64,000 bases of DNA from NCBI RefSeq assembly GCF_006345805.1, contig NC_043011.1, forward strand, positions 20,348,464 through 20,412,463. Direction: 5' to 3'. The notes under the pieces were generated by a model. It was not told where the DNA came from, did not search any database, and was given only the letters and a program-made list of their open reading frames with translations. Both the position numbers and the translations under genes were made by a program. Shown here one piece after another: positions 32,319-63,260 of the stretch (its first letter is position 1; each line of letters starts with the position of its first letter). Source of the stretch: Octopus sinensis (Eukaryota).

Positions 32319-33079
32319 ATCATCATCATCATTGTTCGACCGTGGTCGAGACAATGAAATTTACTATGTTTCGCCAGACTTCACAGTCCATCATAGCATT
32401 ACGGAGGTCTTGTTTCTGGATGCCTGTATCCCTGGAGATTACATCAGGGTAGGAGATGGTGTGTGCCCTCTGGTATCGCGAGCAGATGGCTTCCAGAGGA
32501 GAAGAGTAGAAATGACCTCGTTTTCTGCTCTACAACAATGTCCAGCAAATTGGACTCTTCTACCTTTCACAAGAGTTGATACAGGTCGTAATTTCCCATA
32601 TATTTGTACTTTGGTTGGATGACGCTTCCACGAGATATTTTGAGCTCTCATAAGGAGGCCATCCAACTGCCTCTCAACCTTCTTTGATAACGTCCAGATT
32701 TCTGAGCCATATGGTAGAATTATCAGTCGCTCTTATCAGTGATTCTCTCTTCAATGCCCAGTCTCTTTCACAATTTCTTGAACAAGCCTCAAATCGTGTC
32801 GGTCTTTACCTCAATGAGTCCAAAATTGAATATGTAAACAAGTGCCTGTCCAACAGTGATTTCATCATCTATACTCTCAACAATACGCTCTTAAATATGG
32901 TTTCTGATTACAAATATCTTGGGTCATACATATCACCATCTGAAAAAGATTTTCTAACTAGAAAGGGTATGACCTGGTCAACCTGTAATGATATGCATAA
33001 GATCTGGTCATCAAATCTGAGTAGAGATTTCAAACTTAAAATCTTTAAAGCCACAGTCGAACCAATTCTACTATATGGC
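32319..33079 (-). mobile_element. RTE-like LINE 3' fragment with 5' inversion (twin-priming structure)
   Basis: Minus strand 32721-32319 encodes ILPYGSEIWTLSKKVERQLDG..RRVQFAGHC and ends in a (GAT)n tail. Plus strand 32722-33079 encodes the upstream RT part VALISDSL..GLYLNESK..YKYLGS..EPILLYG. Confidence 0.85.
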
Positions 33080-33129
33080 AACATTAAAAAGTTGGTGGAG
33101 TGGGAAATTACACTACCCAAAAATGGTTA

Positions 33130-33700
33130 AAAGAACTTGAAAGTAAGACGGTGGTTTTTTAGGACCTACTCTAGGACCCTCGACGCCATTGCCGTTTTCA
33201 AAAAGAATATAAATCGAAAGAGAGCTGGCAGAATTTAAGCCAGCGATTAAGTTTATTACTCGTGGGGTCAAATACGCAATCGTGTGGTTGCTGTTTGACT
33301 CCCCAGAAGTGGCCTGTGAATTTGCAAGTCAGCCCCTGGAGGGTAATGAAATTTTGTTTCTTCCTACTTATTGTGGGAAGAGTTTGACAAGGGCTTGGGT
33401 TTGCAGCTGGCTACCCGGAGTTGAGCCCCAGTGGATAGGAGATACTATCCGCCGGGGTCTGGGTGGCAGTAGCACCAAGCTCCTCAGCGTAAATAATCTG
33501 ACTGGGAGGGGTCAAAAGCTGTTTTGTCCCTATGGACCCAGTCAGCCGAAAGTCTGCTATTTCCAAACTTTGAGAATGGCCGGGTCTAAGTATCCGGTGA
33601 TTCTTGAGGTACGCTCCCCACCCCAAAGTGTCATCGGTGATTGAAGTCTGGCCATATAAAAAAAGAACTGTTCTCAAGGGCAAAGCAAAGTTCCGGAGCG
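33130..33700 (+). pseudogene. Decayed LINE ORF1 (gag-like) with a degenerate CCHC zinc knuckle
   Basis: Long frame ..VWLLFDSPEVACEFASQPL..YPVILE, then after a frameshift C-H-R-*-LKSGHIKKE-L, a decayed CX2CX4HX4C. Confidence 0.5.
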
Positions 33701-33837: not shown

Positions 33838-34555
33838 GAGGGTGGGCTGAATAGTTCATAGGCTGACTATGAAGGAGTGATGCTGGAGAGGTGAAATCTT
33901 CCGTGCATTAATTTCAAATCTTTTTATTGATGACTACATTGTTTCTTTCCAGGCAAACTGATATCTGACTGTTCAAAGAGACTTCAAAAGTAACTAGTAG
34001 CAACTGCTCTTGAAAATGGACAAAATTTGTCATCGTGGTACTATCGAGTACCTGCACAAAAGAGCTTTAGCTCCCAAAGACATTCATACTGACATGGTTT
34101 CTAAATCAGGGGATGACATTCCAGGTTTAACAACAGTGCAAAAGGGAGCAGCTGAATTTACGAGGGAAACGGAGGGTTTTGATGGTGACCCGGGGCCTGG
34201 ACGTCCTGCAACGGTCATCACCGAGGAAAACATTGATCACAACATAGTGATGGATGACAGGCGATTGACTACAAATCAAATAGCCAATGCTATTAGCATA
34301 TCTCGTGTGAAAGTTGATAATATTCTGCACAATGAACTTGATATGACAACGGTTTCTGCTAGGTAGGTGCCATGGCTTCTGATACCTGGTCAAGCGCACA
34401 CCAGGCTGATTACAACCTGGTAAAATCTGATATTGTTTGAGGCAGATCCAGCTGGTTTCCTTGATTGTTTCCTAACCCAGGATGGGTGCTGGGTTCATGA
34501 CTTTGAGCCAGAGACAAAGAGACAATCCATTCAGTGGAAACACCCCTAATCACAG
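33838..34555 (+). mobile_element. 5' half of a mariner element (TIR-like start, HTH, WVP motif)
   Basis: GAGGGTGGGCTGAATAGTTC start; MDKICHRGTIEYLHK..PGRPATV..DDRRLT..VSAR*VPWLL..LTQDGCWVHDFEPETKRQSIQWKHP. Confidence 0.85.
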
Positions 34556-37388: not shown

Positions 37389-37438
<50 letters not shown>

Positions 37439-37455
37439 TGATAGATAGATAGATT

Positions 37456-37552
<97 letters not shown>

Positions 37553-38359: not shown

Positions 38360-38557
<198 letters not shown>

Positions 38558-39894
38558 TGTTACGGAATCACCCGTCGTCGCCCGTCCCGAACGGCTCACA
38601 CAAGTTCCGCCACGGAACCCAGAGAGGAGGAGAGAGAGGAGAGACAGATAGATACTGCCACAACCCCAACAGCACAGAGATACAGAGGCACAACCCGAGA
38701 TACAACCCAAAGAGGCAAGGCAACAACTGGCAACACTGGCTTATATTCAAACAACAGTTTATACGACAATCAATTGCTACACATCAAATACATTTAAGGC
38801 AAACAACAAATCAATACATCATACGGTATACCACAGATCAAAGCATTTAACAACATGCATGTAACATATAACAGTGTTCAGTAACGACACAACAAGTCCA
38901 GATCAAATAATGTTCACGATACGTCACAGTCCAATCAGAACACTTCGATACATTATACAATGTTCGTATCACAACAATTCACGTTACATTCAACAAGTCC
39001 TTTACTCAATTCTTCACAATGTCCTTTATCGACCACATCGACAGAGTCCTGACTGTTCTTTTCTGTCGGTCCGTATACACCGTGACACATATCAATGCAC
39101 AAACACATACCTTAATTCCTAACTGAATCGCCAGTGTCCCATTCTGCACTCATCTCTGAATACTGCCAAATCCTCTGAATACTCTGCTAATTCCCCTCTG
39201 TGCATATTCCAATCGCTTGCCCCTAGGCCTCCTCGCATCCCAGCTCGCTCCCAGGAATTCCAACGCTTGCTCCTTAAATCCAAAGTTCCATCCACTCGCT
39301 CTGACCTCCAGAGTCCGTCTGTCTTCTTCCAGGACCGGCCAGCGACTCCAAGATCCGTCTGTGTTCCTCGACGACCGCTCAACGACTGCCCTTCTTGACG
39401 ACCAACTGCGAACTACCAGACCTCACTTCGTCTCTGTCCTTCTTCCACTCCCCTCATCTCCCTCTGTCTATATCGCTCTTACCCTTTCTAACTGCCCTGG
39501 TCCTTATACTCTATCTATATCCTCAATCTGTCCCTTACTGCTTATCCTTTCTATTTGCCCTCTGCTCTTACTCTATCGCTATCGCCTGCCAGACTCTTCC
39601 TATCTATCTGTCCCTTTTCTCTTACTGCCTATCTCTATCGCCTGCTGCCTATTACCCTCTCTTGACAGCTCTACCCTACTCTCACTCTCTGCCTGTCCCT
39701 CTCTGCCCCCCTCATCCTCTCTCACGACATATTCAAGGGGTGCCTGAGCGACCCTAATTCACCCGCACAAGGTCACAGGTCATTCCAAAACCCATTAGTC
39801 CCCATTAAACAAAAGACTGTCCACTTTCTACTAGACATGCCGGAACATAATTCCAATGTGGGTCACCGGGAAATGCACCAGCTAAACCGTAACA

Positions 39895-39906
39895 CTACCC
39901 CCTACC
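39895..39906 (-). other. Polypurine tract GGTAGGGGGTAG (also 43207-43218 and 46513-46524)
   Basis: Abuts the 3' LTR start TGTTAC on the minus strand in all three units. Confidence 0.85.
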
Positions 39907-39934
39907 TAAGCTTTTGTCGACCCGACAAAGCATA

Positions 39935-41825
39935 CTAAACTCGCACCTCGAGCAGCAGACTCTCCAGGGGCTGGGGGTCCCCTGGGTGGTTTCTCCTCCG
40001 GGGGTCTCACCTCCCACGGCCACCACTTCAGCACCAGCCACAGGTTGGCACCTTCCCTCTGCGGCTTGGGTAACCTACCTCCGCCAACGCCGCCAGGCTT
40101 CCTACTAGCCGCCCACAATAGGCGCACACGTCCGAGGAAGTTCCTCAAATCCCTCACACAAGAAGGGTCCGGCCAATCCTTCACAGTGGCCACCTTCCTC
40201 AGGGCTCTATAGCCCACGTAGCATCTTGCTGTACCATCTCCATTCCGCGCAATTATCGCCGACGACCAGGGACCATTCCGCTTTTCCACTGTTCCCCGTC
40301 GCCGATATCTCCTCTTGCGCTGCTGTACTGAGACCTTCCTCCGGCCTCGCTGCTTCCTCAAGCGACAACCGCCCTGGTCGACGAAACGTTCTGCCAGGTC
40401 CGTGCGACCAGATCCAACAACACTCGCGACCAACGTCCTGCGCTCTTCACCAACGGTTGCTTCTTCTCGCAACTGCATCAGCGGACCACGATCTCCCTTA
40501 ACTTCATCACTGCACCGGCAGAACTGACCCCGCCGCTGGTTTACCGTCGGCGCAGTTCCACGATTTGCCCTCTGCAAATCGCCTGCGCAGCCTTCAATAA
40601 ATCGGCCGACCCACCCAGCGCTCTGTCAGCCTCTGCCTCCACCAGGGTCCAGCCGACCCTCAATTGAGTTCCTATTCCGCACTGCATGTCGGGCTCCACC
40701 GCCCCACGCAACCATCAAATACAGAGCTCCCCCAAGTGCCTACAAAGCACCAGCGACTCCTTGCGGACCGCCTCCTCAACTGCATCCGTGGGCCACCAAC
40801 TCCTCAACTGCGTTGCCGTATCGGCAGAACTGGCCCCCCTGGTTCGCCATCTGGCACGATTCCTCGATTTGCCTTCTACAAATCGCCTGTGCCACTTCCA
40901 AAAGATCGGCCGACCCAGCCAGCGCTCCACCAGCTTCTGCTTCCACTAGGGTCCACCCGACCCTCAATCGAGCTTTCACTAGGCACTGCCTGTCGGGCTC
41001 CACCGGCCCCAAGCAACCATCAACAACCACAAAGCTCACCCAACGCTGAAGCAGTCTTCTTGGTTTCGGTGGACCCACCACCGTTCGCAGCCGTCTCGCC
41101 TCGTCAACGGGCCTGGTCCTTTTCCTCACCAGCTTCCGTCCCGCAGGCCTCACAACACACACGCCCGGCCACCAGTCCATCCACGCCTGTGGCCTCTCCA
41201 CAGTGGGAACCATACAGTCCCTCCGGGCCCCAAGAGACAGGGGTCCAGACACCAAGGGACCCGCACACGGCATAGCACCTGCCGCGACCATCACACACAG
41301 AGCCGGAACCTCGGACTCAGCGACATTCGCCCCAGACCTCGCCAGCTCTTCGTCCTGAGCTCCGAGAGACAGGGGCCGAGATGCCAAGGGCTCCAGACAC
41401 GAACAACAGCATCATCAGCCATAACAACTTCAACACAAGCCCTTGGTTAATTCAACCTCTACGGGTTCCAAATCACAAGATTTCTTGGGTACAGCGTCAC
41501 AAATTTCGGCAACCAGCCCAGTTCCGCAAACACAGCCGGTCCAGCATCACAGATTTCGGCAACACTTCCTTCACTATCTGTTTCCCTCGATGCTTCGTTC
41601 GACGGGCAATCTCTGCCCACAGGACCGTCGCTATCCCGGTCCAACACCGATCCTTCAAAGCTGACCCATCCGCAACCTCAAGCTCCCGCTGATCTGCCAC
41701 AGGCCCTGTCGCCTCCTGTCCATTCTCTCCACGAACGCGTCCGTCTGCGCCATCTGGCCCCTAACATCTCCACAATCAGAGCAAGCGAATCCCTCGTCTC
41801 CGGTCTGACAACCAGACAAATCCAT
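39935..41825 (-). CDS. Internal ORF of LTR unit 1 (frameshifted copy of a ~630-aa consensus)
   Basis: ATG (MDLSG..) at 41825 to TAG (..EVRV*) at 39935; ORF-track pieces 41655-41855, 40776-41387 and 39906-40577 cover most of it. Confidence 0.6.
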
Positions 41826-41863
41826 AGCGAAAAAGAACCGATCGAAACGCAGCAATCAGGACA

Positions 41864-41881
41864 ATCCCACTTCTGACACCA
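41864..41881 (-). other. Primer-binding site TGGTGTCAGAAGTGGGAT, complementary to the tRNA-Leu(CAA) 3' end (also 45178-45195 and 48487-48504)
   Basis: 18-nt match to ATCCCACTTCTGACACCA, 2 nt downstream of the 5' LTR in all three units. Confidence 0.9.
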
Positions 41882-43246
41882 GTTGTTACGGAATCACCCG
41901 TCGTCGCCCGTCCCGAACGGCTCACACAAGTTCCGCCACGGAACCCAGAGAGGAGGAGAGAGGAGAGACAGATAGATACTGCCACAACCCAACAGCACAG
42001 AGATACAGAGGCACAACCCGAGATACAACCCAAAGAGGCAAGGCAACAACTGGCAACACTGGCTTATATTCAAACAACAGTTTATACGACAATCAATTGC
42101 TACACATCAAATACATTAAGGCAAACAACAAATCAATACATCATACGGTATACCACAGATCAAAGCATTTAACAACATGCATGTAACAATATAACAGTGT
42201 TCAGTAACGACACACAGTCCAGATCAAATAATGTTCACGATACGTCACAGTTCAATCAGAACACTTCGATACATTATACAATGTTCGTATCACAACAATT
42301 CACGTTACAATTCAACAAGTCCTTTACTCAATTCTTCACAATGTCCTTTATCGACCACATCGACAGAGTCCTTGACTGTCTTTTTCTGTCGGTCCGTATA
42401 CACCGTGACACATATCAATGCACAAACACATACCTTAATTCCTAACTGAATCGCCAGTGTCCCATTCTGCACTCATCTCTGAATACTGCCAAATCCTCTG
42501 AATACTCTGCTAATTCCCCTCTGTGCATATCCAATCGCTTGCCCCTAGCCTCCTCCATCCCGCTCGCTCCAGGAATTCCAACGCTTGCTCCTTAAATCCA
42601 AAGTCCATCCACTCGCTCTGACCTCCAGAGTCCGTCTGTCTTCTTCCAGGACCGGCCAGCGACTCCAAGATCCGTCTGTGTTCCTCGACGACCGCTCAAC
42701 GACTGCCCTTCTTGACGACCAACTGCGAACTACCAGACCTCACTTCGTCTCTGTCCTTCTTCCACTCCCCTCATCTCCCTCTGTCTATATCGCTCTTACC
42801 CTTTCTAACTGCCCTGGTCCTTATACTCTCTATCTATACCTCAATCTGTCCCTTACTGCTTATCCTTTCTATTTGCCCTCTGCTCTTACTCTATCGCTAT
42901 CGCCTGCCAGACTCTTCCTATCTATCTGTCCCTTTCTCTTCTTCTCTACTGCCTATCTCTATCGCCTGCTGCTATTACCCTCTCTTGACAGCTCTACCAT
43001 ACTCTCTGCCTTCCCTCTCTGCCCCCTCATCTCTCTCACGACATATTCAAGGGGTGCTGACGACCCCTCTTCACCCGCACAAGGTCACAGGTCATTCCAA
43101 AACCCATTAGTCCTCCATTAAACAAAAGACTGTCACTTTTCTACTAGACATGCCGGAACCATATTCCAATGTGGGTCACCGGGAATGCACACAGCTAAAC
43201 GTAACACTACCCCCTACCTAAGCTTTTGTCGACCCGACAAAGCATA

Positions 43247-45139
43247 CTAAACTCGCACCTCCGAGCAGCAGACTCTCCAGGGGCTGGGGGTCCCCTTGGG
43301 TGGTTTCTCCTCCGGGGGTCTCACCTCCCACGGCCACCACTTCAGCACCAGCCACAGGTTGGCACCTTCCCTCTGCGGCTTGGGTAACACCTCCGCCAAC
43401 GCCGCCAGGCTTCCTACTAGCCGCCCACAATAGGCGCACCGTCCGAGGAAGTTCCTCAAATCCCTCACACAAGAAGGGTCCGGCCAATCCTTCACAGTGG
43501 CCACCTTCCTCAGGGCTCTATAGCCCACGTAGCATCTTGCTGTACCATCTCCATTCCGCGCAATTATCGCCGACGACCAGGGACCATTCCGCTTTTCCAC
43601 TGTTCCCCGTCGCCGATATCTCCTCTTGCGCTGCTGTACTGAGACCTCCTCCTCCGGCCTCGCTGCTTCCTCAAGCGACAACCGCCCTGGTCGACGAAAC
43701 GTTCTGCCAGGTCCGTGCGACCAGATCCAACAACACTCGCGACCAACGTCCTGCGCTCTTCACCAACGGTTGCTTCTTCCGCAACTGCATCAGCGGACCA
43801 CGATCTCCCTTAACTTCATCACTGCTGCACCGGCAGAACTGACCCCGCCGCTGGTTTACCGTCCGGCGCAGTTCCACGATTTGCCCTCTGCAAATCGCCT
43901 GCGCAGCCTTCAATAAATCGGCCGACCCACCCAGCGCTCTGTCAGCCTCTGCCTCCACCAGGGTCCAGCCGACCCTCAATTGAGTTCCTATTCCGCACTG
44001 CATGTCGGGCTCCACCGGCCCCACGCAACCATCAAACAGAGCTCCCCCAAGTGCCTACAAGCACCAGCGACTCCTTGCGGACCGCCTCCTCAACTGCATC
44101 CGTGGGCACACCAACTCCTTCAACTGCGTTGCCGTATCGGCAGAACTGGCCCCACCACTGGTTCGCCATCTGGCACGATTCCTCGATTTGCCTTCTACAA
44201 ATCGCCTGTGCCACTTCCAAAAGATCGGCCGACCCAGCCAGCGCTCCACCAGCTTCTGCTTCCACTAGGGTCCACCCGACCCTCAATCGAGCTTTCACTA
44301 GGCACTGCCTGTCGGGCTCCACCGGCCCCAAGCAACCATCAACCACAAAGCTCACCCAACGCTGAAGCAGTCTTCTTGGTTTCGGTGGACCCACCACCGT
44401 TCGCAGCCGTCTCGCCTCGTCAACGGGCCTGGTCCTTTTCCTCACCAGCTTCCGTCCGCAGGCCTCACAACACCACACGCCCGGCCGCCAGTCCATCCAC
44501 GCCTGTGGCCTCTCCACAGTGGGAACCATACAGTCCCTCTGGGCCCCAAGAGACAGGGGTCCAGACACCAAGGACCCGCACACGGCATAGCACCTGCCGC
44601 GACCATCACACACAGAGCCGGAACCTCGGACTCAGCGACATTCGCCCCAGACCTCGCCAGCTCTTCGTCCTGAGCTCCGAGAGACAGGGTCCGAGATGCC
44701 AAGGGCTCCAGACACGGAACAACAGCATCAGCCATAACAACTTCAACAGCCTTTGGTTACTTCAACCTCTACGGTTCCAAATCACAAGATTTCTTGGGTA
44801 CAGCGTCACAAATTTCGGCAACCAGCCCAGGTTCCGCAAACACAGCCGGTCCAGCATCACAGATTTCGGCAACACTTCCTTCACTATCTGTTTCCCTCGA
44901 TGCTTCGTTCGACGGGCAATCTCTGCCCACAGGACCGTCGCTATCCTCGGTCAACACCGATCCTTCAAAGCTGACCCATCCGCAACCTCAAGCTCCCGCT
45001 GATCTGCCCACAGGCCCTGTCGCCTCCTGTCCATTCTCTCCACGAACGCGTCCGTCTGCGCCATCTGGCCCCTTAACATCTCCACAATCAGAGCAAGCGA
45101 AATCTCCTCGTCTCCGGTCTGACAACCAGACAAATCCAT
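43247..45139 (-). CDS. Internal ORF of LTR unit 2 (frameshifted copy of a ~630-aa consensus)
   Basis: Span 1893 nt = 631 codons; contains PWSSAIIARNGDGTARCYVGYRAL and KVATVKDWPDPSCVRDLRNFLGRCAYCGRLV (RT finger and thumb motifs). Confidence 0.6.
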
Positions 45140-46552
45140 AGCGAAAAAGAACCGATCGAAACGCAGCAATCAGGACAATCCCACTTCTGACACCAGTTGT
45201 TACGGAATCACCCGTCGTCGCCCGTCCCGAACGGCTCACACAAGTTCCGCCACGGAACCCAGAGAGGAGGAGAGAGAGGAGAGACAGATAGATACTGCCA
45301 CAACCCCAACAGCACAGAGATACAGAGGCACAACCCGAGATACAACCCAAAGAGGCAAGGCAACAACTGGCAACACTGGCTTATATTCAAACAACAGTTT
45401 ATACGACAATCAATTGCTACACATCAAATACATTAAGGCAAACAACAAATCAATACATCATACGGTATACCACAGATCAAAGCATACAACAATGCATGTA
45501 ACAATATAACAGTGTTCAGTAACGACACAACAACCAGATCAAATAATGTTCACGATACGTCACAGTCAATCAGAACACTTCGATACATTATCAATGTTCG
45601 TATCACACAATTCACGTTACAATTCAACAAGTCCTTTACTCATTCTTCACAATGTCCTTTATCGACCACATCGACAGAGTCCTTGACTGTTCTTTTCTGT
45701 CGGTCCGTTACACCGTGACACATATCAATGCACAAACACATACCTTAATTCCTAACTGAATCGCCAGTGTCCCATTCTGCACTCATCTCTGAACTGCCAA
45801 ATCCTCTGAATACTCTGCTAATTCCCCTCTGTGCATATTCCAATCGCTTGCCCGGCCTCCTCGCATCCCGCTCCTCCAGGAATTCCAACGCTTGCTCCTA
45901 AATCCAAAGTTCCATCCATCGCTCTGACCTCCAGAGTCCGTCTGTCTTCTTCCAGGACCGGCCAGCGACTCCAAGATCCTCTGTGTTCCTCGACGACCGC
46001 TCAACGACTGCCCTTCTTGACGACCAACTGCGAACTACCAGACCTCACTTCGTCTCTGTCCTTCTTCCACTCCCCTCATCTCCCTCTGTCTATATCGCTC
46101 TTACCCTTTCTAACTGCCCTGGTCCTTATACTCTATCTATATCCTCAATCTGTCCCTTACTGCTTATCCTTTCTATTTGCCTCTGCTCTTACTCTATCGC
46201 TATCGCCTGCCAGACTCTTCCTATCTATCTGTCCCTTTTCTCTTACTGCCTATCTCTATCGCCTGCTGCCTATTACCCTCTCTTGACAGCTCTACCATAC
46301 TCTCTGCCTGTCCCTCTCTGCCCCCCTCATCCTCTCTCACGACATATTCAAGGGGTGCCTGAGCGACCCCTAATTCACCCGCACAAGGTCACAGGTCATT
46401 CCAAAACCCATTAGTCCTCCATTAAACAAAAGACTGTCACTTTTCTACTAGACATGCCGGAACCATAATTCCAATGTGGGTCACCGGGAAATGCACCAGC
46501 TAAACCGTAACACTACCCCCTACCTAAGCTTTTGTCGACCCGACAAAGCATA

Positions 46553-48448
46553 CTAAACTCGCACCTCCGAGCAGCAGACTCTCCAGGGGCTGGGGGTCCC
46601 CTTGGGTGGTTTCTCCTCCGGGGGTCTCACCTCCCACGGCCACCACTTCAGCACCAGCCACAGGTTGGCACCTTCCCTCTGCGGCTTGGTAACACCTCCG
46701 CCAACGCCGCCAGGCTTCCTACTAGCCGCCCACAATAGGCGCACGTCCGAGGAAGTTCCTCAAATCCCTCACACAAGAAGGGTCCGGCCAATCCTTCACA
46801 GTGGCCACCTTCCTCAGGGCTCTATAGCCCACGTAGCATCTTGCTGTACCATCCATCTCCATTCCGCGCAATTATCGCCGACGACCAGGGACCATTCCGC
46901 TTTTCCACTGTTCCCCGTCGCCGATATCTCCTCTTGCGCTGCTGTACTGAGACCTTCCTCCGGCCTCGCTGCTTCCTCAAGCGACAACCGCCCTGGTCGA
47001 CGAAACGTTCTGCCAGGTCCGTGCGACCAGATCCAACAATACTCGCGACCAACGTCCTGCGCTCTTCACCAACGGTTGCTTCTTCCGCAACTGCATCAGC
47101 GGACCACGATCTCCCTTAACTTCATCACTGCACCGGCAGAACTGACCCCGCCGCTGGTTTACCGTCCGGCGCAGTTCCACGATTTGCCCTCTGCAAATCG
47201 CCTGCGCAGCCTTCAATAAATCGGCCGACCCACCCAGCGCTCTGTCAGCCTCTGCCTCCACCAGGGTCCAGCCGACCCTCAATTGAGTTCCTATTCCGCA
47301 CTGCATGTCGGGCTCCACCGGCCCCACGCAACCATCAAATACAGAGCTCCCCCAAGTGCCTACAAAGCACCAGCGACTCCTTGCGGACCGCCTCCTCAAC
47401 TGCATCCGTGGGCCACCAACTCCTTCAACTGCGTTGCCGTATCGGCAGAACTGGCCCCACCACTGGTTCGCCATCTGGCACGATTCCTCGATTTGCCTTC
47501 TACAAATCGCCTGTGCCACTTCCAAAAGATCGGCCGACCCAGCCAGCGCTCCACCAGCTTCTGCTTCCACTAGGGTCCACCCGACCCTCAATCGAGCTTT
47601 CACTAGGCACTGCCTGTCGGGCTCCACCGGCCCCAAGCAACCATCAACCACAAAGCTCACCCAACGCTGAAGCAGTCTCCTGGTCTCGGTGGACCCACCA
47701 CCGTTCGCAGCCGTCTCGCCTCGTCAACGGGCCTGGTCCTTTTCCTCACCAGCTTCCGTCCCGCAGCCTCACAACACACACGCCCGGCCGCCAGTCCATC
47801 CACGCCTGTGGCCTCTCCACAGTGGGAACCATACAGTCCCCCCGGGCCCCAAGAGACAGGGGTCCAGACACCAAGGGACCCGCACACGGCATAGCACCTG
47901 CCGCGACCATCACACACAGAGCCGGAACCTCGGACTCAGCGACATTCGCCCCAGACCTCGCCAGCTCTTCGTCCTGAGCTCCGAGAGACAGAGGCCGAGA
48001 TGCCAAGGGCTCCAGACACGGAACAACAGCATCAGCCATAACAACTTCAACAAGCCTCTTGGTTAATTCAACCTCTACGGATTCCAAATCACAAGATTTC
48101 TTGGGTACAGCGTCACAAATTTCGGCAACCAGCCCAGGTTCCGCAAACACAGCCGGTCCAGCATCACAGATTTCGGCAACACTTCCTTCACTATCTGTTT
48201 CCCTCGATGCTTCGTTCGACGGGCAATCTCTGCCCACAGGACCGTCGCTATCCTCGGTCCAACACCGATCCTTCAAAGCTGACCCATCCGCAACCTCAAG
48301 CTCCCGCTGATCTGCCCACAGGCCCTGTCGCCTCCTGTCCATTCTCTCCACGAACGCGTCCGTCTGCGCCATCTGGCCCCTACCATCTCCACAATCAGAG
48401 CAAGCGAAATCTCCTCGTCGTCTCGGTCTGACAACCAGACAAATCCAT
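46553..48448 (-). CDS. Internal ORF of LTR unit 3 (frameshifted copy of a ~630-aa consensus)
   Basis: ORF-track pieces 47746-48372, 46977-47660, 46822-47052 and 46553-46744. Confidence 0.6.
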
Positions 48449-49866
48449 AGCGAAAAAGAACCGATCGAAACGCAGCAATCAGGACAATCCCACTTCTGAC
48501 ACCAGTTTTTACGGAATCACCCGTCGTCGCCCGTCCCGAACGGCTCACACAAGTTCCGCCGCCACGGAACCCAGAGAGGAGGAGAGAGAGGAGAGACAGA
48601 TAGATACTGCCACAACCCCAACAGCACAGAGATACAGAGGCACAACCCGAGATACAACCCAAAGAGGCAAGGCAACAACTGGCAACACTGGCTTATATTC
48701 AAACAACAGTTTATACGACAATCAATTGCTACACATCAAATACATTTAAGGCAAACAACAAATCAATACATCATACGGTATACCACAATCAAGCATTAAA
48801 ACATAAACAAACATGCACTGCATGTAACAATATAACAGTGTTCAGTAACGACACAACAAGTCCAGATCAAATAATGTTCACGATACGTCACAGTCCAATC
48901 AGAACACTTCGATACATTATACAATGTTCGTATCACAACAATTCACGTTACAATTCAACAAGTCCTTTACTCAATCTTCACAATGTCCTTTATCGACCAC
49001 ATCGACAGAGTCCTTGACTGTTCTTTTCTGTCGGTCCGTATACACCGTGACACATATCAATGCACAAACACATACCTTAATTCCTAACTGAATCGCCATG
49101 TCCCATTCTGCACTCATCTCTGAATACTGCCAAATCCTCCTGAATACTCTGCTAATTCCTCTCTGTGCATATTCCAATCGCTTGCCCCTAGGCCTCCTCG
49201 CATCCCAGCTCGCTCCCAGGAATTCCAACGCTTGCTCCTTAAATCCAAGGTTCCATCCACTCGCTCTGACCTCCAAGGTCCGTCTGTCTTCTTCCAGGAC
49301 CGGCCAGCGACTCAAGATCCGTCTGTGTTCCTCGACGACCGCTCAACGACTGCCCTTCTTGACGACCACTGCGAACTACCAGACCTCACTTCGTCTCTGT
49401 CCTTCTTCCACTCCCCTCATTTCCCTCTGTATATATCGCTCTTACCCTTTCTAACTGCCCTGGTCCTTATACTCTATCTATATCCTCAATCTGTCCCTTA
49501 CTGCTTATCCTTTCTATTTGCCCTCTGCTCTTACTCTATCGCTATCGCCTGCCAGACTCTTCCTCTCTATCTGTCCCTTTTCTCTTACTGCCTATCTCTA
49601 TCGCCTGCTGCCTATTACCCTCTCTTGACAGCTCTACCATACTCTCTGCCTGTCCCTCTCTGCCCACCTCATCCTCTCTCACGACATATTCAAGGGGTGC
49701 CTGAGCGACCCCTAATTCACCCGCACAAGGTCACAGGTCATTCCAAAACCCATTAGTCCTCCATTAAACAAAAGACTGTCACTTTTCTACTAGACATGCC
49801 GGAACCATAATTCCAATGTGGGTCACCGGGAAATGCACCAGCTAAACCGTAACAATATATAATATA

Positions 49867-50884: not shown

Positions 50885-51550
50885 GAACCTTCAGAACAGA
50901 GACCAGGAAACCATGGTCCTCTGGAGGACACTTGATCTAAGCCACTTTGACTATTGCTCTCAGCTATGGTCACCATCCAGTGTCAAGTTAATCACAGAAC
51001 TTGAGGCGATCCAACGAAGCTACACGAAGAAGATAGCCTCTGTGCAGCATATAAGCTATTGGAAGACTCAAGAGATAGAGATCTATTCCTTAGAGCGCAG
51101 GCGAGAAGAAAATATGCCATAATATACATCTGGAAGATCCTAGAAGGACTTGTCCCAAACTTTGACATCGAGAGTTACACAAATGCCAGAACTGGGCGCC
51201 ACTGCATAGTGCCAAGGACTCCAAATTTGCCATCAAGATGTAGGACAAGATACTATGATAGCCTGGGCTTCCGAAGCCCACAGCTCTTCAATATCCTCCC
51301 GAAGAACCTAAGAGACCTGCATGAGGTGGATGCAGATGTCTTTAAAATGAAACTGGATCTCTTCTTGTCAGGTGTCTCAGATGAACCAACTTCACAGCAA
51401 GAGGTGCAGATGAGGGCAACTGCATCGAACTCTCTCATGCACCAGATGGCAATTGCTAAAAAAGCATTCGTGAAGTAAAATCATGTAGCAACACCAAATG
51501 GCGGTGCCCCAGCATGGCCACAGCTTGTGAGCTGAAACTAAATAAATAAA
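50885..51550 (+). mobile_element. 5'-truncated CR1-clade LINE 3' end (ORF2 C-terminus, 3' UTR, (AAAT)n tail)
   Basis: LSHFDYCSQLWSPSSVKLITELEAIQRSYTKKI..SLERRR..YIWKILEGLVPN..PQLFNILPKNLRDL..FKMKLDLFL..DEP; tail GGCGGTGCCCCAGCATGGCCACAG..CTGAAACTAAATAAATAAA. Confidence 0.88.
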
Positions 51551-51716
51551 TTTAAAAAATAAATAAATAAATAAATATATATATATGTATATATATAAAT
51601 AGATATATAATATGTATATATTAAATACATATATATATATAAAAAAAATATATATGTAAATATATATATATATGTAAAATATAATATACATATATATATT
51701 TATATATATATACACA

Positions 51717-51791
<75 letters not shown>

Positions 51792-51794
51792 CAT

Positions 51795-52265
51795 ACGTAT
51801 TATATTCAGTTGAATTAGGTACTTAAGTTGAAGTACCAAGTCATTCCGGTGTTATCCGCACAGCTCGAAGTAAGGTGAATAAAATCAAAATAAGTAACAG
51901 GATGAAAAGTAGTAATACAGTTCGACCGTAACACAATATGCTATTGTCATTTATCTTATAATCCTGCTTCCGATTCCTTAGATAGTGTGTATATTTTTCC
52001 AGATAACTTCCATATGTAAGTTGTTTGAGTGGTCTTTATGGTGACCGCCTAATAATTAATTGTGTAAATATGAGGCATTAAGTGGATTCTACAAAATAGT
52101 AATCTTCTTTATAATGTTTAAATGGATTTATATATCCCCCTTAGCTAACCCGGTAATGATAGCGGTGTATTTAAATAGATGTAATGATTACATTGTTCAT
52201 TATGGATCCGCTTGGAACGGTAATACAGCATTACTAATTGACATCCTGTTACTTATTTGATTTCA
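51795..52265. mobile_element. Unclassified element between (AT)n runs with a short inverted duplication
   Basis: AATCAAAATAAGTAACAGGATG (~51883-51902) versus CATCCTGTTACTTATTTGATT (~52242-52262); both ends abut (AT)n. Confidence 0.45.
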
Positions 52266-53279: not shown

Positions 53280-54063
53280 CCTAGAGCCACGCTAATAGCT
53301 TAGGAGTGAAATTTAGGATTTCTCGGTTTTCTGGGAATCGATTTTGATAAAACTTTTCCCTGCTGGTTTGCACACTATGGCAACACTATTGTTATGTTTT
53401 CATTATTCTGTGTAACGTCCTTTCTTATTTATTTCAGATTCTTCAGTTTTTGGATGAACCATGCTAATCGCTCATGAATGAAAATAGCCCATCTAGACAT
53501 TTTTTTCGGAAAATGAAAGTTGATGATACATATTAAACATACATTGAGTATATACTTAACTGAAAACCATAATGATATTATAACATTTATTGACACAATT
53601 AATTATTTAGCCACATGTGTACCTTTTCGACGAATAACTTTAAAAACCCTATTAGTCATGGGATCTGTCAATTTCTTAATAGCAGCAGGTTGGACTGCCT
53701 CTGCTACAGTTTTGATGGTCGCCCATAAGACATCTTTCGGAGTAAAATGGCGTCCATCGGCATAAATATCTTGTTTAAGGATGGACCACAGATTTTCAAT
53801 GGGGTTGAGATTCAGAGATGCTGGCAGCCACTCCATCAACCTTTCACTTTGTATGCCGTAAGACCCTAGTAATGTTTGGGTGGTCCTAACAGAGTGGGAG
53901 GGAGCGTTGTCATGCATGAATACGAGATTCCTTAGAAGTGACAGCGGTATGCCATCTAGCCTGGGATCCAAGACCTCCTACAAGAGATTACGGTAGGCGG
54001 CTGCGATCAGTTTAACCCTTTCAGGGTCCTGACTGGGCCAACAAGACTGTCCCCAATGATACC

Positions 54064-62304: not shown

Positions 62305-63260
62305 TTAGCCTGAGTCTAAGAGGCAATGTTCTACAGTCTGTCTAAGAGGAGCAATTCCACAACATTCAAAAGCACGCTTTATAGTTTCTTTATTCAAAGT
62401 GGTAACAGCTTGGGTCGCAAAGTTCACTATCTCTTGATAAGAAGGTTTTTTACGACACCCTTTATTTGTATACTCCTTTTTGCCGTTTGAAAACCAATTC
62501 TCCCATTCAGCACGAAGAGTTTTCTTGAAAAGACCAATAATTGATACATCTAATGGCTGCAAGTAAGATGTTGTTTTAGGAGGTATAAGTTTGAGAATTG
62601 TATTCCTACGTTTGAACACTTCTCGGAGCTCTGTTTTCTTGTGCACTGAGCATTCATCCATGAATAGTACTGAATTTTGAGCATGGAATAGTTGTGCTGT
62701 TCTCTTCCCAAACACTTTGTCAGCCCACACCTGCATGAGTTCATATGTGATTGATCCCCTGTTGGAGACTGTTATGTAAATATTCTTTGGGATCTTGATT
62801 TTAGGCACGTTTTTTAATCCTTTAAGGATAATCATTGTTTTCAACACCTTTCCTGCAGCATTAACACACAACACAGCAGTAAAACGGGCTTTGGTAGCAC
62901 CACAGTGGCTAGCATCTACATTTTTATTGCCAGAAAAGTCTATGGTTGTTGAACTAAACATGCCAACGTTGTTTTAGGTGTTTCGTTCATATTATAAATC
63001 TGGCCAGCATCCTTATCTGCTGTTAATACTGGAATGATATCTAAATAGTCACTGGCGATTTGTGTTTTTTCTCCGAGTGTTTTATTGTCTGCTTGATCAA
63101 CATGTGTAATCTTTCTCACAGTCAGTTTATTCCGTTTCATAAAATTGAAAATCCATTTATCAGAACATCTAAAGCTGTTCATTCCAATTCCAAACCTTTT
63201 TACTAATTCAAAAGCATATTCCCGTAAACGGCGATAATTTACAATTATATTGTTTGCACG
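62305..63260 (-). pseudogene. pogo-superfamily (DDE_1/CENP-B-like) transposase, frameshifted, DD35D spacing
   Basis: FRCSDKWIFNFMKRN, NMNETP (first D mutated), RFTAVLCVNAAG, FMDECSVH-35 aa-(QPL)DV. Confidence 0.88.

What the first reader, a model, noticed from the sequence alone, without database searches (positions are those of the whole stretch)
43247..45139. Hidden ~630-aa ORF ending in a reverse transcriptase with the catalytic palm excised
Seen: each unit has frameshifts at different positions. Stitching the ORF-track pieces gives one stop-free protein of about 630 aa (MDLSGCQTGDEE...SEVRV*), matching the 1893-nt ATG-to-TAG span of unit 2 and filling ~95% of the internal region. Its C-terminus has PWSSAIIARNGDGTARCYVGYRAL, similar to the Gypsy RT N-terminal motif SPWxSPIVLVxKKDGxxRFCVDYRxL. 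This is joined directly to KVATVKDWPDPSCVRDLRNFLGRCAYCGRLVGSLAALA, similar to the thumb/connection motif KVxAIxxWPxPxxVxxLRSFLGLxxYYRRFVxxFAxIA. About 170 aa including YxDD are missing in frame. Inference: the indels are sequencing errors, and the element encodes a novel acidic N-terminus, repeat module and RT-remnant fusion. It could be a packaging or adaptor protein that recruits a helper element's machinery, or a dominant-negative regulator of it.
Basis: partly seen in the sequence, partly recalled or inferred. Interest (0 to 1): 0.85.

Follow-up and report, generated by a model that had tools for sequence, protein, structure and literature searches.

The report
Octopus non-autonomous retrotransposon with conserved ORF
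The region is a tandem triple copy of an octopus-specific, helper-dependent LTR retrotransposon whose single ~637-residue gene is a selectively maintained leftover of a Gag-Pol polyprotein with the reverse-transcriptase catalytic core deleted; at this locus the gene is broken by one real frameshift plus many assembly errors.

Summary
The hidden ORF is real as a family feature. A solo copy in the same Octopus sinensis assembly (L003) carries it intact: 637 codons, same ATG and same ...SEVRV stop. The window holds LTR-int-LTR-int-LTR-int-LTR (38558-49854, minus strand) with TG..CA LTRs, a 19-nt tRNA-Leu(CAA) primer-binding site, a polypurine tract and ATAT flanks.

The three copies carry 10-18 frame-breaking indels each. 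Nearly all are private and half are in homopolymers (34 indels : 21 substitutions, against 5 : 75 between loci), so they are probably assembly errors. One non-homopolymer 1-nt deletion is shared by all three units and looks real. It cuts the RT remnant off the rest of the ORF here.

The C-terminus matches Ty3 RT in two colinear pieces (E 5.6e-4; 3.2e-6 for a diverged relative). About 140 residues holding the catalytic triad are missing. The same junction occurs in three subfamilies.

dN/dS is 0.42-0.58 overall, and 0.23-0.31 in the N-terminal 60 residues and the RT remnant. A decayed CCHC knuckle suggests a Gag-Pol relic. Function is untested, no helper was found, and structure prediction failed.

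The parts
38558..49854 (-). Whole tandem array LTR-A / unit 3 / LTR-B / unit 2 / LTR-C / unit 1 / LTR-D, period ~3.31 kb, bounded on both sides by ATAT inside ATATATTATATAT flanks
48507..49854 (-). LTR-A (1348 bp), starts TGTTACG; terminal CA mutated (CGTAAAA)
45198..46512 (-). LTR-B (1315 bp), TGTTACG...CGTAACA
41884..43206 (-). LTR-C (1323 bp), TGTTACG...CGTAACA; most private substitutions (32)
38558..39894 (-). LTR-D (1337 bp), TGTTACG...CGTAACA
45177..45195 (-). Primer-binding site of unit 2, TGGTGTCAGAAGTGGGATT, 2 nt after the LTR; exact complement of the last 19 nt of tRNA-Leu-CAA (same site at 48486-48504 and 41863-41881)
43247..45139 (-). Unit 2 copy of the ORF (the finding): 13 frame-shifting indels relative to the intact 637-codon reference, no nonsense codon
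46553..48448 (-). Unit 3 copy of the ORF: 10 frame-shifting indels; longest exact pieces 233 aa and 248 aa
39935..41825 (-). Unit 1 copy of the ORF: 18 frame-shifting indels
44960..45139 (-). Unit 2: conserved N-terminal 60 residues (dN/dS 0.23 between subfamilies)
44913..44956 (-). Unit 2: decayed CCHC (Gag nucleocapsid-type) zinc knuckle, residues 62-76
44359..44912 (-). Unit 2: acidic region with repeated PCxxPLxSxPLSLG motif (residues 77-268); contains cryptic splice donor CAG|GTGCTA at ~44592-44594
44047..44358 (-). Unit 2: repeat module R1 (residues 269-372)
43734..44046 (-). Unit 2: repeat module R2 (residues 373-476); single in the two other subfamilies
43607..43733 (-). Unit 2: strongly basic linker (residues 477-518, net +12); contains the 1-nt deletion shared by all three units, between 43724 and 43725
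43493..43606 (-). Unit 2: RT fingers-tip remnant (aligns to Ty3 RT chain residues 96-135)
43337..43492 (-). Unit 2: RT thumb remnant (aligns to Ty3 RT chain residues 274-328, the FLG..Y.RR nucleic-acid-contact helix)
43250..43336 (-). Unit 2: C-terminal tail, low dS, not protein-constrained
43207..43219 (-). Polypurine tract AGGTAGGGGGTAG abutting LTR-C (same at 46513-46525 and 39895-39907); identical in O. vulgaris and O. sinensis solo copies

Best explanation
The finding is one unit of a tandem array of a young, octopus-restricted, non-autonomous LTR retrotransposon derived from a Ty3/gypsy-type element. Shown: the element has 1.2-1.35-kb TG..CA LTRs, a tRNA-Leu(CAA)-type primer-binding site, a polypurine tract and ATAT target duplications. 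Its only gene is a 530-640-residue ORF that is intact in a sister copy. Shown with differing strength: the ORF is a remodelled Gag-Pol relic. It has a decayed nucleocapsid CCHC knuckle near the N-terminus (weaker evidence). At the C-terminus the RT fingers tip is fused in frame to the RT thumb, with the ~140 residues carrying the catalytic triad and dimerisation arginines deleted (firmer evidence). No protease, RNase H or integrase is detectable. Inferred: the element must be copied and integrated by a helper element's enzymes. Shown: the ORF has been under purifying selection across three subfamilies, strongest on the N-terminal 60 residues and on the RT remnant. Inferred, about 35% likely: the protein serves the element's own spread, most plausibly as a nucleic-acid-binding adaptor (basic linker plus thumb helix) that gets its RNA into the helper's particles. 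Inferred: at this locus a single insertion became a three-unit array by unequal LTR-LTR recombination. Shown: all units inherited one 1-nt deletion that truncates the protein before the RT remnant. Most likely: the many other, private indels are long-read assembly errors in a tandem repeat.
For: Anatomy: searches give the LTR termini, the PBS 2 nt after the LTR, the PPT and the ATAT flanks at three loci. The PBS is the exact complement of the last 19 nt of tRNA-Leu-CAA. Intact ORF: 637 codons in L003, same assembly as the window. A near-intact copy in O. vulgaris needs 1 frame switch on the sense strand, against 7 on the antisense and ~15 in shuffles. XP_036354368.1 reads the 3' half uninterrupted. 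Errors versus real lesions: 34 private indel events against 21 substitutions among the window copies, half in homopolymers, versus 5 indels and 75 substitutions between loci. One deletion is shared and not in a homopolymer. RT remnant: Ty3 RT 4ol8_A at E 5.6e-4 and 3.2e-6, each as two colinear stretches, 96-135 and 274-328. The missing part holds D151, D213, D214, R140 and R203; the retained thumb holds the nucleic-acid contact residues. The same junction occurs in three subfamilies. Selection: dN/dS 0.42-0.52 within the main family, against 0.66-1.11 in off-frames. Between subfamilies it is 0.58 overall, 0.23 for the N-terminal 60 residues and 0.27-0.31 for the RT remnant at dS 0.36-0.78, with an off-frame control of 1.06. 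Knuckle: the union CX2CX4HX4C pattern occurs once in the real alignment and in 5 of 5000 column shuffles. Dispersed family: 20 O. vulgaris models on at least 14 contigs of 29-226 Mb, none with a Pfam domain.
Against: No helper element was identified, so trans-mobilisation is inferred only from missing domains. No expression, translation or protein evidence was examined. Pfam finds nothing in the intact ORF at E<=10. The RT match rests on about 90 residues and modest E-values against a small database. The knuckle test was prompted by a non-significant PDB hit (E 0.5). Both AlphaFold models were unusable. Only one of six loci is fully intact. Middle segments have dN/dS 0.6-0.8, with bootstrap intervals that nearly or actually include 1. 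The loci other than the window were found through N-terminal protein models, which biases which copies were seen. Read-level data for the array were not available, so the error interpretation and the array itself are unverified.
Confidence: 0.75

Rival explanations
1. The ORF is a functionless relic. The family spreads purely through cis signals (LTR ends, PBS, PPT, packaging RNA), and the open frame persists only because the copies are young.
For: Five of six loci carry a lesion. There is no Pfam domain. The middle segments, linker and tail have dN/dS 0.6-1.6 with wide intervals. The 5'/3' LTRs are 99.3-99.6% identical, so the copies are young.
Against: dN/dS below 1 is specific to the true frame in all three within-family pairs. 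It persists between subfamilies at dS 0.35-0.8, with 0.23-0.31 in two segments whose synonymous sites are not unusually conserved. Three subfamilies keep the same architecture and the same junction. No nonsense codon occurs among 52-77 substitutions per copy.
Confidence: 0.15
2. The protein is a dominant-negative or copy-number regulator of the helper element. A catalytically dead RT fragment would poison helper RT or particle assembly.
For: The retained pieces are RT surface elements without catalysis. The RT remnant is the most constrained part of the protein. Self-encoded truncated inhibitors are known from other retroelements (Ty1 p22; my own knowledge, not checked here).
Against: A parasite that depends on the helper gains nothing obvious from inhibiting it. 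The two arginines at the Ty3 RT dimer interface (R140, R203) lie in the deleted segment. No experiment or co-occurrence data were available.
Confidence: 0.1
3. The private indels are genuine mutations and the three window units are simply dead, decaying copies. The window therefore says nothing about an ORF.
For: One frameshift is certainly shared and probably real. LTR-C carries 32 private substitutions, so some real divergence exists within the array. In-window stitching is no better than on the antisense strand.
Against: The indel-to-substitution ratio among window copies is 1.6:1, against 1:15 between loci. All indels are private, mostly 1 nt, and half are in homopolymers. A solo copy in the same assembly is clean.
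Confidence: 0.1
4. The sequence is a host gene family (domesticated retroelement gene) rather than a mobile element.
For: There is purifying selection on the ORF. RefSeq and ENA annotate pieces as proteins.
Against: Every examined main-family copy sits between near-identical LTRs with a PBS, a PPT and target duplications, at unrelated loci on many chromosomes. Many of the gene models are chimeric or truncated.
Confidence: 0.03

Closest known systems
TR-GAG elements (terminal-repeat retrotransposons with a GAG domain) and other semi-autonomous LTR retrotransposons of plants
   Same: They have two LTRs, a PBS and a PPT, with one ORF left over from the polyprotein and no enzymes. They are considered dependent on a helper (described in PMC13570524).
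   Different: Here no GAG capsid domain is detectable (Pfam null), and only a decayed NC knuckle remains. The ORF also keeps an in-frame RT fingers-thumb fusion. The host is a cephalopod, not a plant.
Non-autonomous LTR retrotransposon families retaining partly decayed POL domains (15 sugar-beet families in PMC13570524); LARDs
   Same: The size class is similar (~4.6 kb for a solo element). Fragments of RT are retained, autonomous ancestry is obscured, and tandemly arranged copies are reported.
   Different: In those families the remnants are described as decayed and patchy. Here the remnant is in frame, has the same junction in three subfamilies, and is the most strongly constrained part of the ORF. 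LARDs are defined as non-coding, and this element is coding.
Ty3 reverse transcriptase (PDB 4OL8 / 7Q5B), Ty3/gypsy (Metaviridae) lineage
   Same: It is the best and only significant sequence match. The fingers beta-hairpin region and the thumb helix align colinearly.
   Different: About 140 residues including D151, D213, D214, R140 and R203 are absent, as are RNase H, protease and integrase. The protein cannot be a polymerase.
Tandem LTR-internal-LTR-internal arrays formed by unequal recombination between LTRs
   Same: There are four LTRs and three internal regions sharing LTRs, with one pair of flanking target duplications.
   Different: Nothing unusual, but whether the copy number is real or inflated by assembly could not be checked.

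Membership tests
LTR retrotransposon (structural definition) | Direct long terminal repeats ending 5'-TG...CA-3' with short terminal inverted repeats | tested here: met
   There are four LTRs of 1315-1348 bp with TGTTACG...CGTAACA termini. The same termini occur in O. vulgaris and O. sinensis solo copies.
LTR retrotransposon (structural definition) | Primer-binding site complementary to a tRNA 3' end just downstream of the 5' LTR | tested here: met
   TGGTGTCAGAAGTGGGATT lies 2 nt after the LTR and is the exact complement of the last 19 nt of human tRNA-Leu-CAA-2-1 as printed in PMC10359600. The octopus tRNA itself was not available.
LTR retrotransposon (structural definition) | Polypurine tract abutting the 3' LTR | tested here: met
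   AGGTAGGGGGTAG lies immediately before every downstream LTR and is identical at three loci.
LTR retrotransposon (structural definition) | Target-site duplication of 4-6 bp | tested here: inconclusive
   ATAT is present on both sides at all three loci. All three insertions lie in AT-rich or AT-repeat DNA, so chance identity cannot be excluded.
Ty3/gypsy (Metaviridae) lineage | RT sequence most similar to Ty3/gypsy RTs | tested here: met
   The top PDB hits are Ty3 RT and Ty3 Gag-Pol (E 5.6e-4 / 6.9e-3, and 3.2e-6 / 7.3e-5 for the L002 relative), ahead of gammaretroviral RTs. The evidence is short and modest.
Ty3/gypsy (Metaviridae) lineage | Domain order PR-RT-RH-INT | not testable with these tools
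   PR, RH and INT are absent (Pfam null at E<=10), so the order cannot be read.
Active reverse transcriptase | Palm with the catalytic aspartates (D...YxDD) | tested here: not met
   The alignment jumps from Ty3 RT chain residue ~135 to ~274. D151, D213 and D214 lie in the gap. There is no RVT_1 Pfam hit.
Non-autonomous LTR retrotransposon | Complete cis signals but no protease, RT, RNase H or integrase | tested here: met
   The helper was not identified.
TR-GAG | ORF with a recognisable GAG domain | tested here: not met
   There is no Retrotrans_gag or zf-CCHC or any other Pfam hit. The N-terminal profile has no significant PDB match. Only a decayed CX2CX4HX4C pattern remains.
LARD / TRIM | Non-coding internal region (TRIM also under 1-1.5 kb) | tested here: not met
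   The internal region is 95% ORF, intact in L003 and under purifying selection. A solo element is ~4.3-4.6 kb.

The most novel reading that the evidence does not exclude
The protein is a hyperparasite's tool. It would be a catalytically empty RT mimic (fingers tip plus thumb helix) joined to a basic RNA-binding linker and an acidic N-terminal domain. It would bind the element's own RNA and dock onto the helper element's polymerase or particle, so that the non-autonomous element out-competes its helper for reverse transcription. That would be a protein-based strategy for non-autonomous LTR elements, which are usually thought to rely on cis RNA signals alone.
Probability: 0.2. Interest if true: 0.7.

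Novelty: new variant of a known kind. Interest (0 to 1): 0.4.

Why it matters
Non-autonomous LTR retrotransposons are usually treated as non-coding passengers or as carriers of decaying gene fragments. Here a helper-dependent family keeps a long ORF under purifying selection in three subfamilies. The strongest constraint falls on a reverse-transcriptase fragment that cannot polymerise. If that protein really acts in mobilisation, it gives a tractable case for how a parasite of a retroelement uses a protein rather than only RNA signals. On the practical side, the family is annotated in octopus genomes as 'hypothetical' or chimeric host proteins and donates a splice donor to host gene models, so recognising it cleans up annotation. 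The locus also shows how tandem repeats in long-read assemblies collect indel errors that hide real ORFs.

Tried and rejected
1. A three-copy majority vote did not restore the ORF: 12 stops remained and the longest open stretch was 363 aa. Two copies share the wrong state at one site and all three share one deletion.
3. Pfam found nothing on six frame pieces, on the intact 637-aa ORF, on two subfamily ORFs or on the knuckle peptides.
4. PDB profile searches with the N-terminal alignment and the repeat-module alignment gave nothing significant.
A window-exact 248-aa piece found only two octopus relatives among 1.84 billion representatives.
6. A word-indexed search with the RT remnant found no candidates, so the autonomous parent or helper was not found.
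7. AlphaFold2 on a 248-aa window piece and on P0002 with a 5-row alignment gave mean pLDDT 39 and 33. No fold search was run on such models.
8. There were no tRNA genes in any locus and no Rfam hits in the window.
9. A protease remnant between the knuckle and RT was looked for by eye and by Pfam and was not found.
10. The clustering of lesions in the last third of the ORF in the non-window loci was rejected as evidence, because those loci were found through N-terminal protein models.

Full report
WHAT IS THERE. The window is AT-rich (GC 0.28-0.43) except for a GC-rich, strongly C-skewed island at about 38.5-49.9 kb. Repeat analysis shows a ~3.31-kb period with four copies of one part and three of the other. 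On the minus strand the layout is:
- LTR-A 49854-48507
- unit 3
- LTR-B 46512-45198
- unit 2 (the finding)
- LTR-C 43206-41884
- unit 1
- LTR-D 39894-38558

Each LTR starts TGTTACG and ends CGTAACA. Two nucleotides after each upstream LTR lies TGGTGTCAGAAGTGGGATT. Immediately before each downstream LTR lies AGGTAGGGGGTAG. The whole array is bracketed by ATAT within identical ATATATTATATAT flanks. The 19-nt primer-binding site is the exact complement of the 3' end of tRNA-Leu-CAA as printed in PMC10359600. An exact ORF product elsewhere in the window places the window in Octopus sinensis assembly GCA_006345805.1, chromosome CM016873.1, at about 20.4 Mb. The rest of the window is TE debris and microsatellites, with no host gene, tRNA or Rfam hit.

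THE OBSERVATION. The ATG-to-TAG span 45139-43247 is 1893 nt and fills 95% of the 1991-nt internal region. All three units are frame-broken at different places. Two controls weaken the in-window argument. A three-copy majority vote still has 12 stops. The minimum number of frame switches needed to read through without a stop is 6-7 on the sense strand but only 4-7 on the antisense strand.

The ORF is validated by independent copies:
- An O. vulgaris solo element (L001) needs 1 switch on the sense strand, against 7 on the antisense and ~15 for shuffles.
- The O. sinensis RefSeq protein XP_036354368.1 reads the 3' half without interruption.
- The solo element that encodes that protein (L003, same assembly as the window) has a fully intact ORF of 637 codons, from the same MDLSGCQTGDEE start to the same SEVRV stop.

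ERRORS VERSUS REAL LESIONS. Among the window's three internal copies there are 34 indel events and 21 substitutions. All are private to one copy, most are 1 nt, and half lie in homopolymers. Between the window majority and the O. vulgaris copy there are 75 substitutions and 5 indel events. That contrast, together with the clean L003 copy in the same assembly, makes assembly error in a tandem repeat the likeliest source of the private indels.

Relative to the intact ORF the units carry 18, 13 and 10 frame-shifting indels and no nonsense codon. One lesion is different. All three units lack a G in GGATGCTGG, which is not a homopolymer (ORF nt ~1438; between 43724/43725 in unit 2). This is most simply a real mutation of the array's founder. 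It would end the protein about 17 codons after residue ~479 and leave the RT remnant out of frame.

THE RT REMNANT. The 144-aa C-terminal piece of unit 2 matches Ty3 RT (4ol8_A) at E 5.6e-4, as two colinear stretches: chain residues 96-135 and 274-313. The more canonical sequence of a diverged O. vulgaris family (L002) gives E 3.2e-6 with stretches 96-134 and 277-328.

The chain index runs +2 relative to the numbering used in the Ty3 review PMC5371799. In that numbering the protein retains about 94-132 and 275-326 and lacks about 133-274. The missing part contains the catalytic D151, D213 and D214 and the dimerisation residues R140 and R203. The retained thumb piece is the helix whose residues contact the primer-template. 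The junction YRALRKVATVKDWPDP aligns to both RT segments, so the breakpoints lie in a short stretch of internal similarity. A template-switch origin is my inference. Pfam finds no RT, protease, RNase H, integrase or Gag domain in any version.

FAMILY AND SELECTION. The N-terminal 270 residues retrieve 20 O. vulgaris 'hypothetical' proteins on at least 14 contigs of 29-226 Mb. They are 49-93% identical, none has a Pfam domain and none is of Gag-Pol length. An exhaustive search with the module region found only octopus relatives.

Three subfamilies were examined at DNA level: the main family (window, L001, L003), subfamily B (L005, L006) and L002. All share the architecture and the same RT junction. 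Only the main family has the module duplicated.

dN/dS results:
- Within the main family: 0.42-0.52 in the true frame (upper bootstrap bounds 0.77-0.84), against 0.66-1.11 in the off-frames.
- Main family versus subfamily B: 0.58 overall (0.44-0.73).
- N-terminal 60 residues: 0.23.
- RT remnant: 0.27.
- Basic linker and tail: low dS and omega above 1, which is more typical of nucleotide-level cis constraint near the PPT than of protein-level constraint.
- Main family versus L002: RT remnant 0.31 at dS 0.78, off-frame control 1.06.

Between loci the ORF is 95-96% identical while the LTRs are only 73-80% identical, with U3 far more diverged than U5. Within each solo element the two LTRs are 99.3-99.6% identical, so the insertions are young.

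ORIGIN OF THE N-TERMINAL PART. The N-terminal profile has no significant PDB match. Its top, non-significant hit is a retroviral nucleocapsid zinc knuckle at positions 61-79. At that spot the subfamilies read CWTEDSDGPVGRDCP, CWTGDKSGHVGGDCP and YGTCGKGGHVGGDFP. Every CX2CX4HX4C ligand position survives in at least one subfamily. The union pattern occurs once in the real alignment and in 5 of 5000 column shuffles. I read this as a decayed Gag-NC knuckle, which makes the ORF a remodelled Gag-Pol relic with almost no capsid part. The protein is bipolar in charge: net -26 over residues 1-200 and net +48 after that, including +12 in the 42-residue linker.

HOW IT PROBABLY WORKS. Shown: the cis signals are complete, no enzymatic domain is present, and the ORF is selectively maintained. 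Inferred: the element is reverse-transcribed and integrated by a helper Ty3/gypsy element, which was not found. The protein is kept because it helps the element's own propagation, most plausibly by binding nucleic acid through the basic linker and thumb helix and linking the RNA to helper particles. The array arose from one insertion by unequal LTR-LTR recombination. A regulator or dominant-negative role and a functionless-relic reading remain possible. Both AlphaFold runs failed (pLDDT 39 and 33), so there is no structural evidence.

COMPARISON AND NOVELTY. Non-autonomous LTR retrotransposons that keep a GAG ORF (TR-GAG) or decayed POL fragments, and tandemly arranged copies, are documented in plants (PMC13570524). 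I found no description of this octopus family in the searchable literature. TE libraries such as Repbase or Dfam could not be queried. What differs from the known cases is an in-frame, family-wide, selectively constrained fingers-thumb RT fusion in an animal element. I rate it a new variant of a known kind, of moderate interest.

LIMITS AND CARE. I handled LTRs and the ORF separately and did not build or print a full-length or repaired element. Only protein translations and statistics of the ORF were produced.

Noticed in passing
window 38558-49854: The element is present as LTR-int-LTR-int-LTR-int-LTR with a single pair of ATAT flanks. This points to one insertion expanded by unequal LTR recombination, or to copy number inflated by the assembler.
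   Followed up: partly
window 41884-43206 (LTR-C): LTR-C carries 32 private substitutions against 4-14 in the other three LTRs, and is only 96-97% identical to them. This is unexplained; it could be real divergence, gene conversion or locally worse consensus.
   Followed up: no
window ~44592-44594 (also ~41277-41279 and ~47896-47898); L001 ~10444: A cryptic splice donor CAG|GTGCTA lies inside the ORF, after ...CVMVAA. At least three O. vulgaris gene models (P0001, P0005, P0022) switch to unrelated downstream exons at this point. One is a RING/Death-domain gene whose first 148 residues come from the element.
   Followed up: partly
L003 7008-8921 vs RefSeq XP_036354368.1: RefSeq annotates only the last 306 of the 637 codons as 'uncharacterized protein LOC118760873'. 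In O. vulgaris, 20 copies are annotated as hypothetical proteins, so the family is unmasked in both annotations.
   Followed up: partly
L003 ORF nt 829-852: The otherwise intact O. sinensis copy has a compensated pair of 1-nt indels that rewrites 8 codons at the start of module R1 (VAGAGGAR instead of CLGPVEPD).
   Followed up: partly
LTRs of window, L001, L003: The ORF is 95-96% identical between loci, but the LTRs are only 73-80% identical, with U3 at 40-60% and U5 at ~93%. ORF synonymous divergence is only ~0.05-0.07, which suggests LTR swapping or very fast U3 evolution.
   Followed up: partly
L003 7008-8918 (intact ORF): The 637-residue protein has no histidine at all. It is 12% Arg, 10% each Ala, Gly and Val, and 3% Trp. 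The sense strand is G-rich (G 748 vs C 396) and 60% GC in a ~36% GC genome.
   Followed up: no
window 32684-33130, 51059-51478, 34010-34366, 53603-53971, 62305-62961: These are other TE fragments: LINE-type RT C-terminal pieces, Tc1/mariner-type transposase pieces, and a 218-aa pogo-type DDE_1 ORF that is annotated as a gene in the assembly.
   Followed up: partly
window 37389-37551, 38362-38557, 51559-51795: Long ATAG and AT microsatellites flank the array. All three main-family insertions examined sit in ATAT-containing AT-rich DNA, which suggests a target preference.
   Followed up: no
L001, L002, L005, L006: Each non-window copy has exactly one ORF-breaking lesion, always in the last third: a 14-nt deletion, a frame change just before the RT remnant (two loci), and a W-to-stop change inside it. 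This is probably ascertainment bias, because these loci were found through N-terminal protein models.
   Followed up: partly
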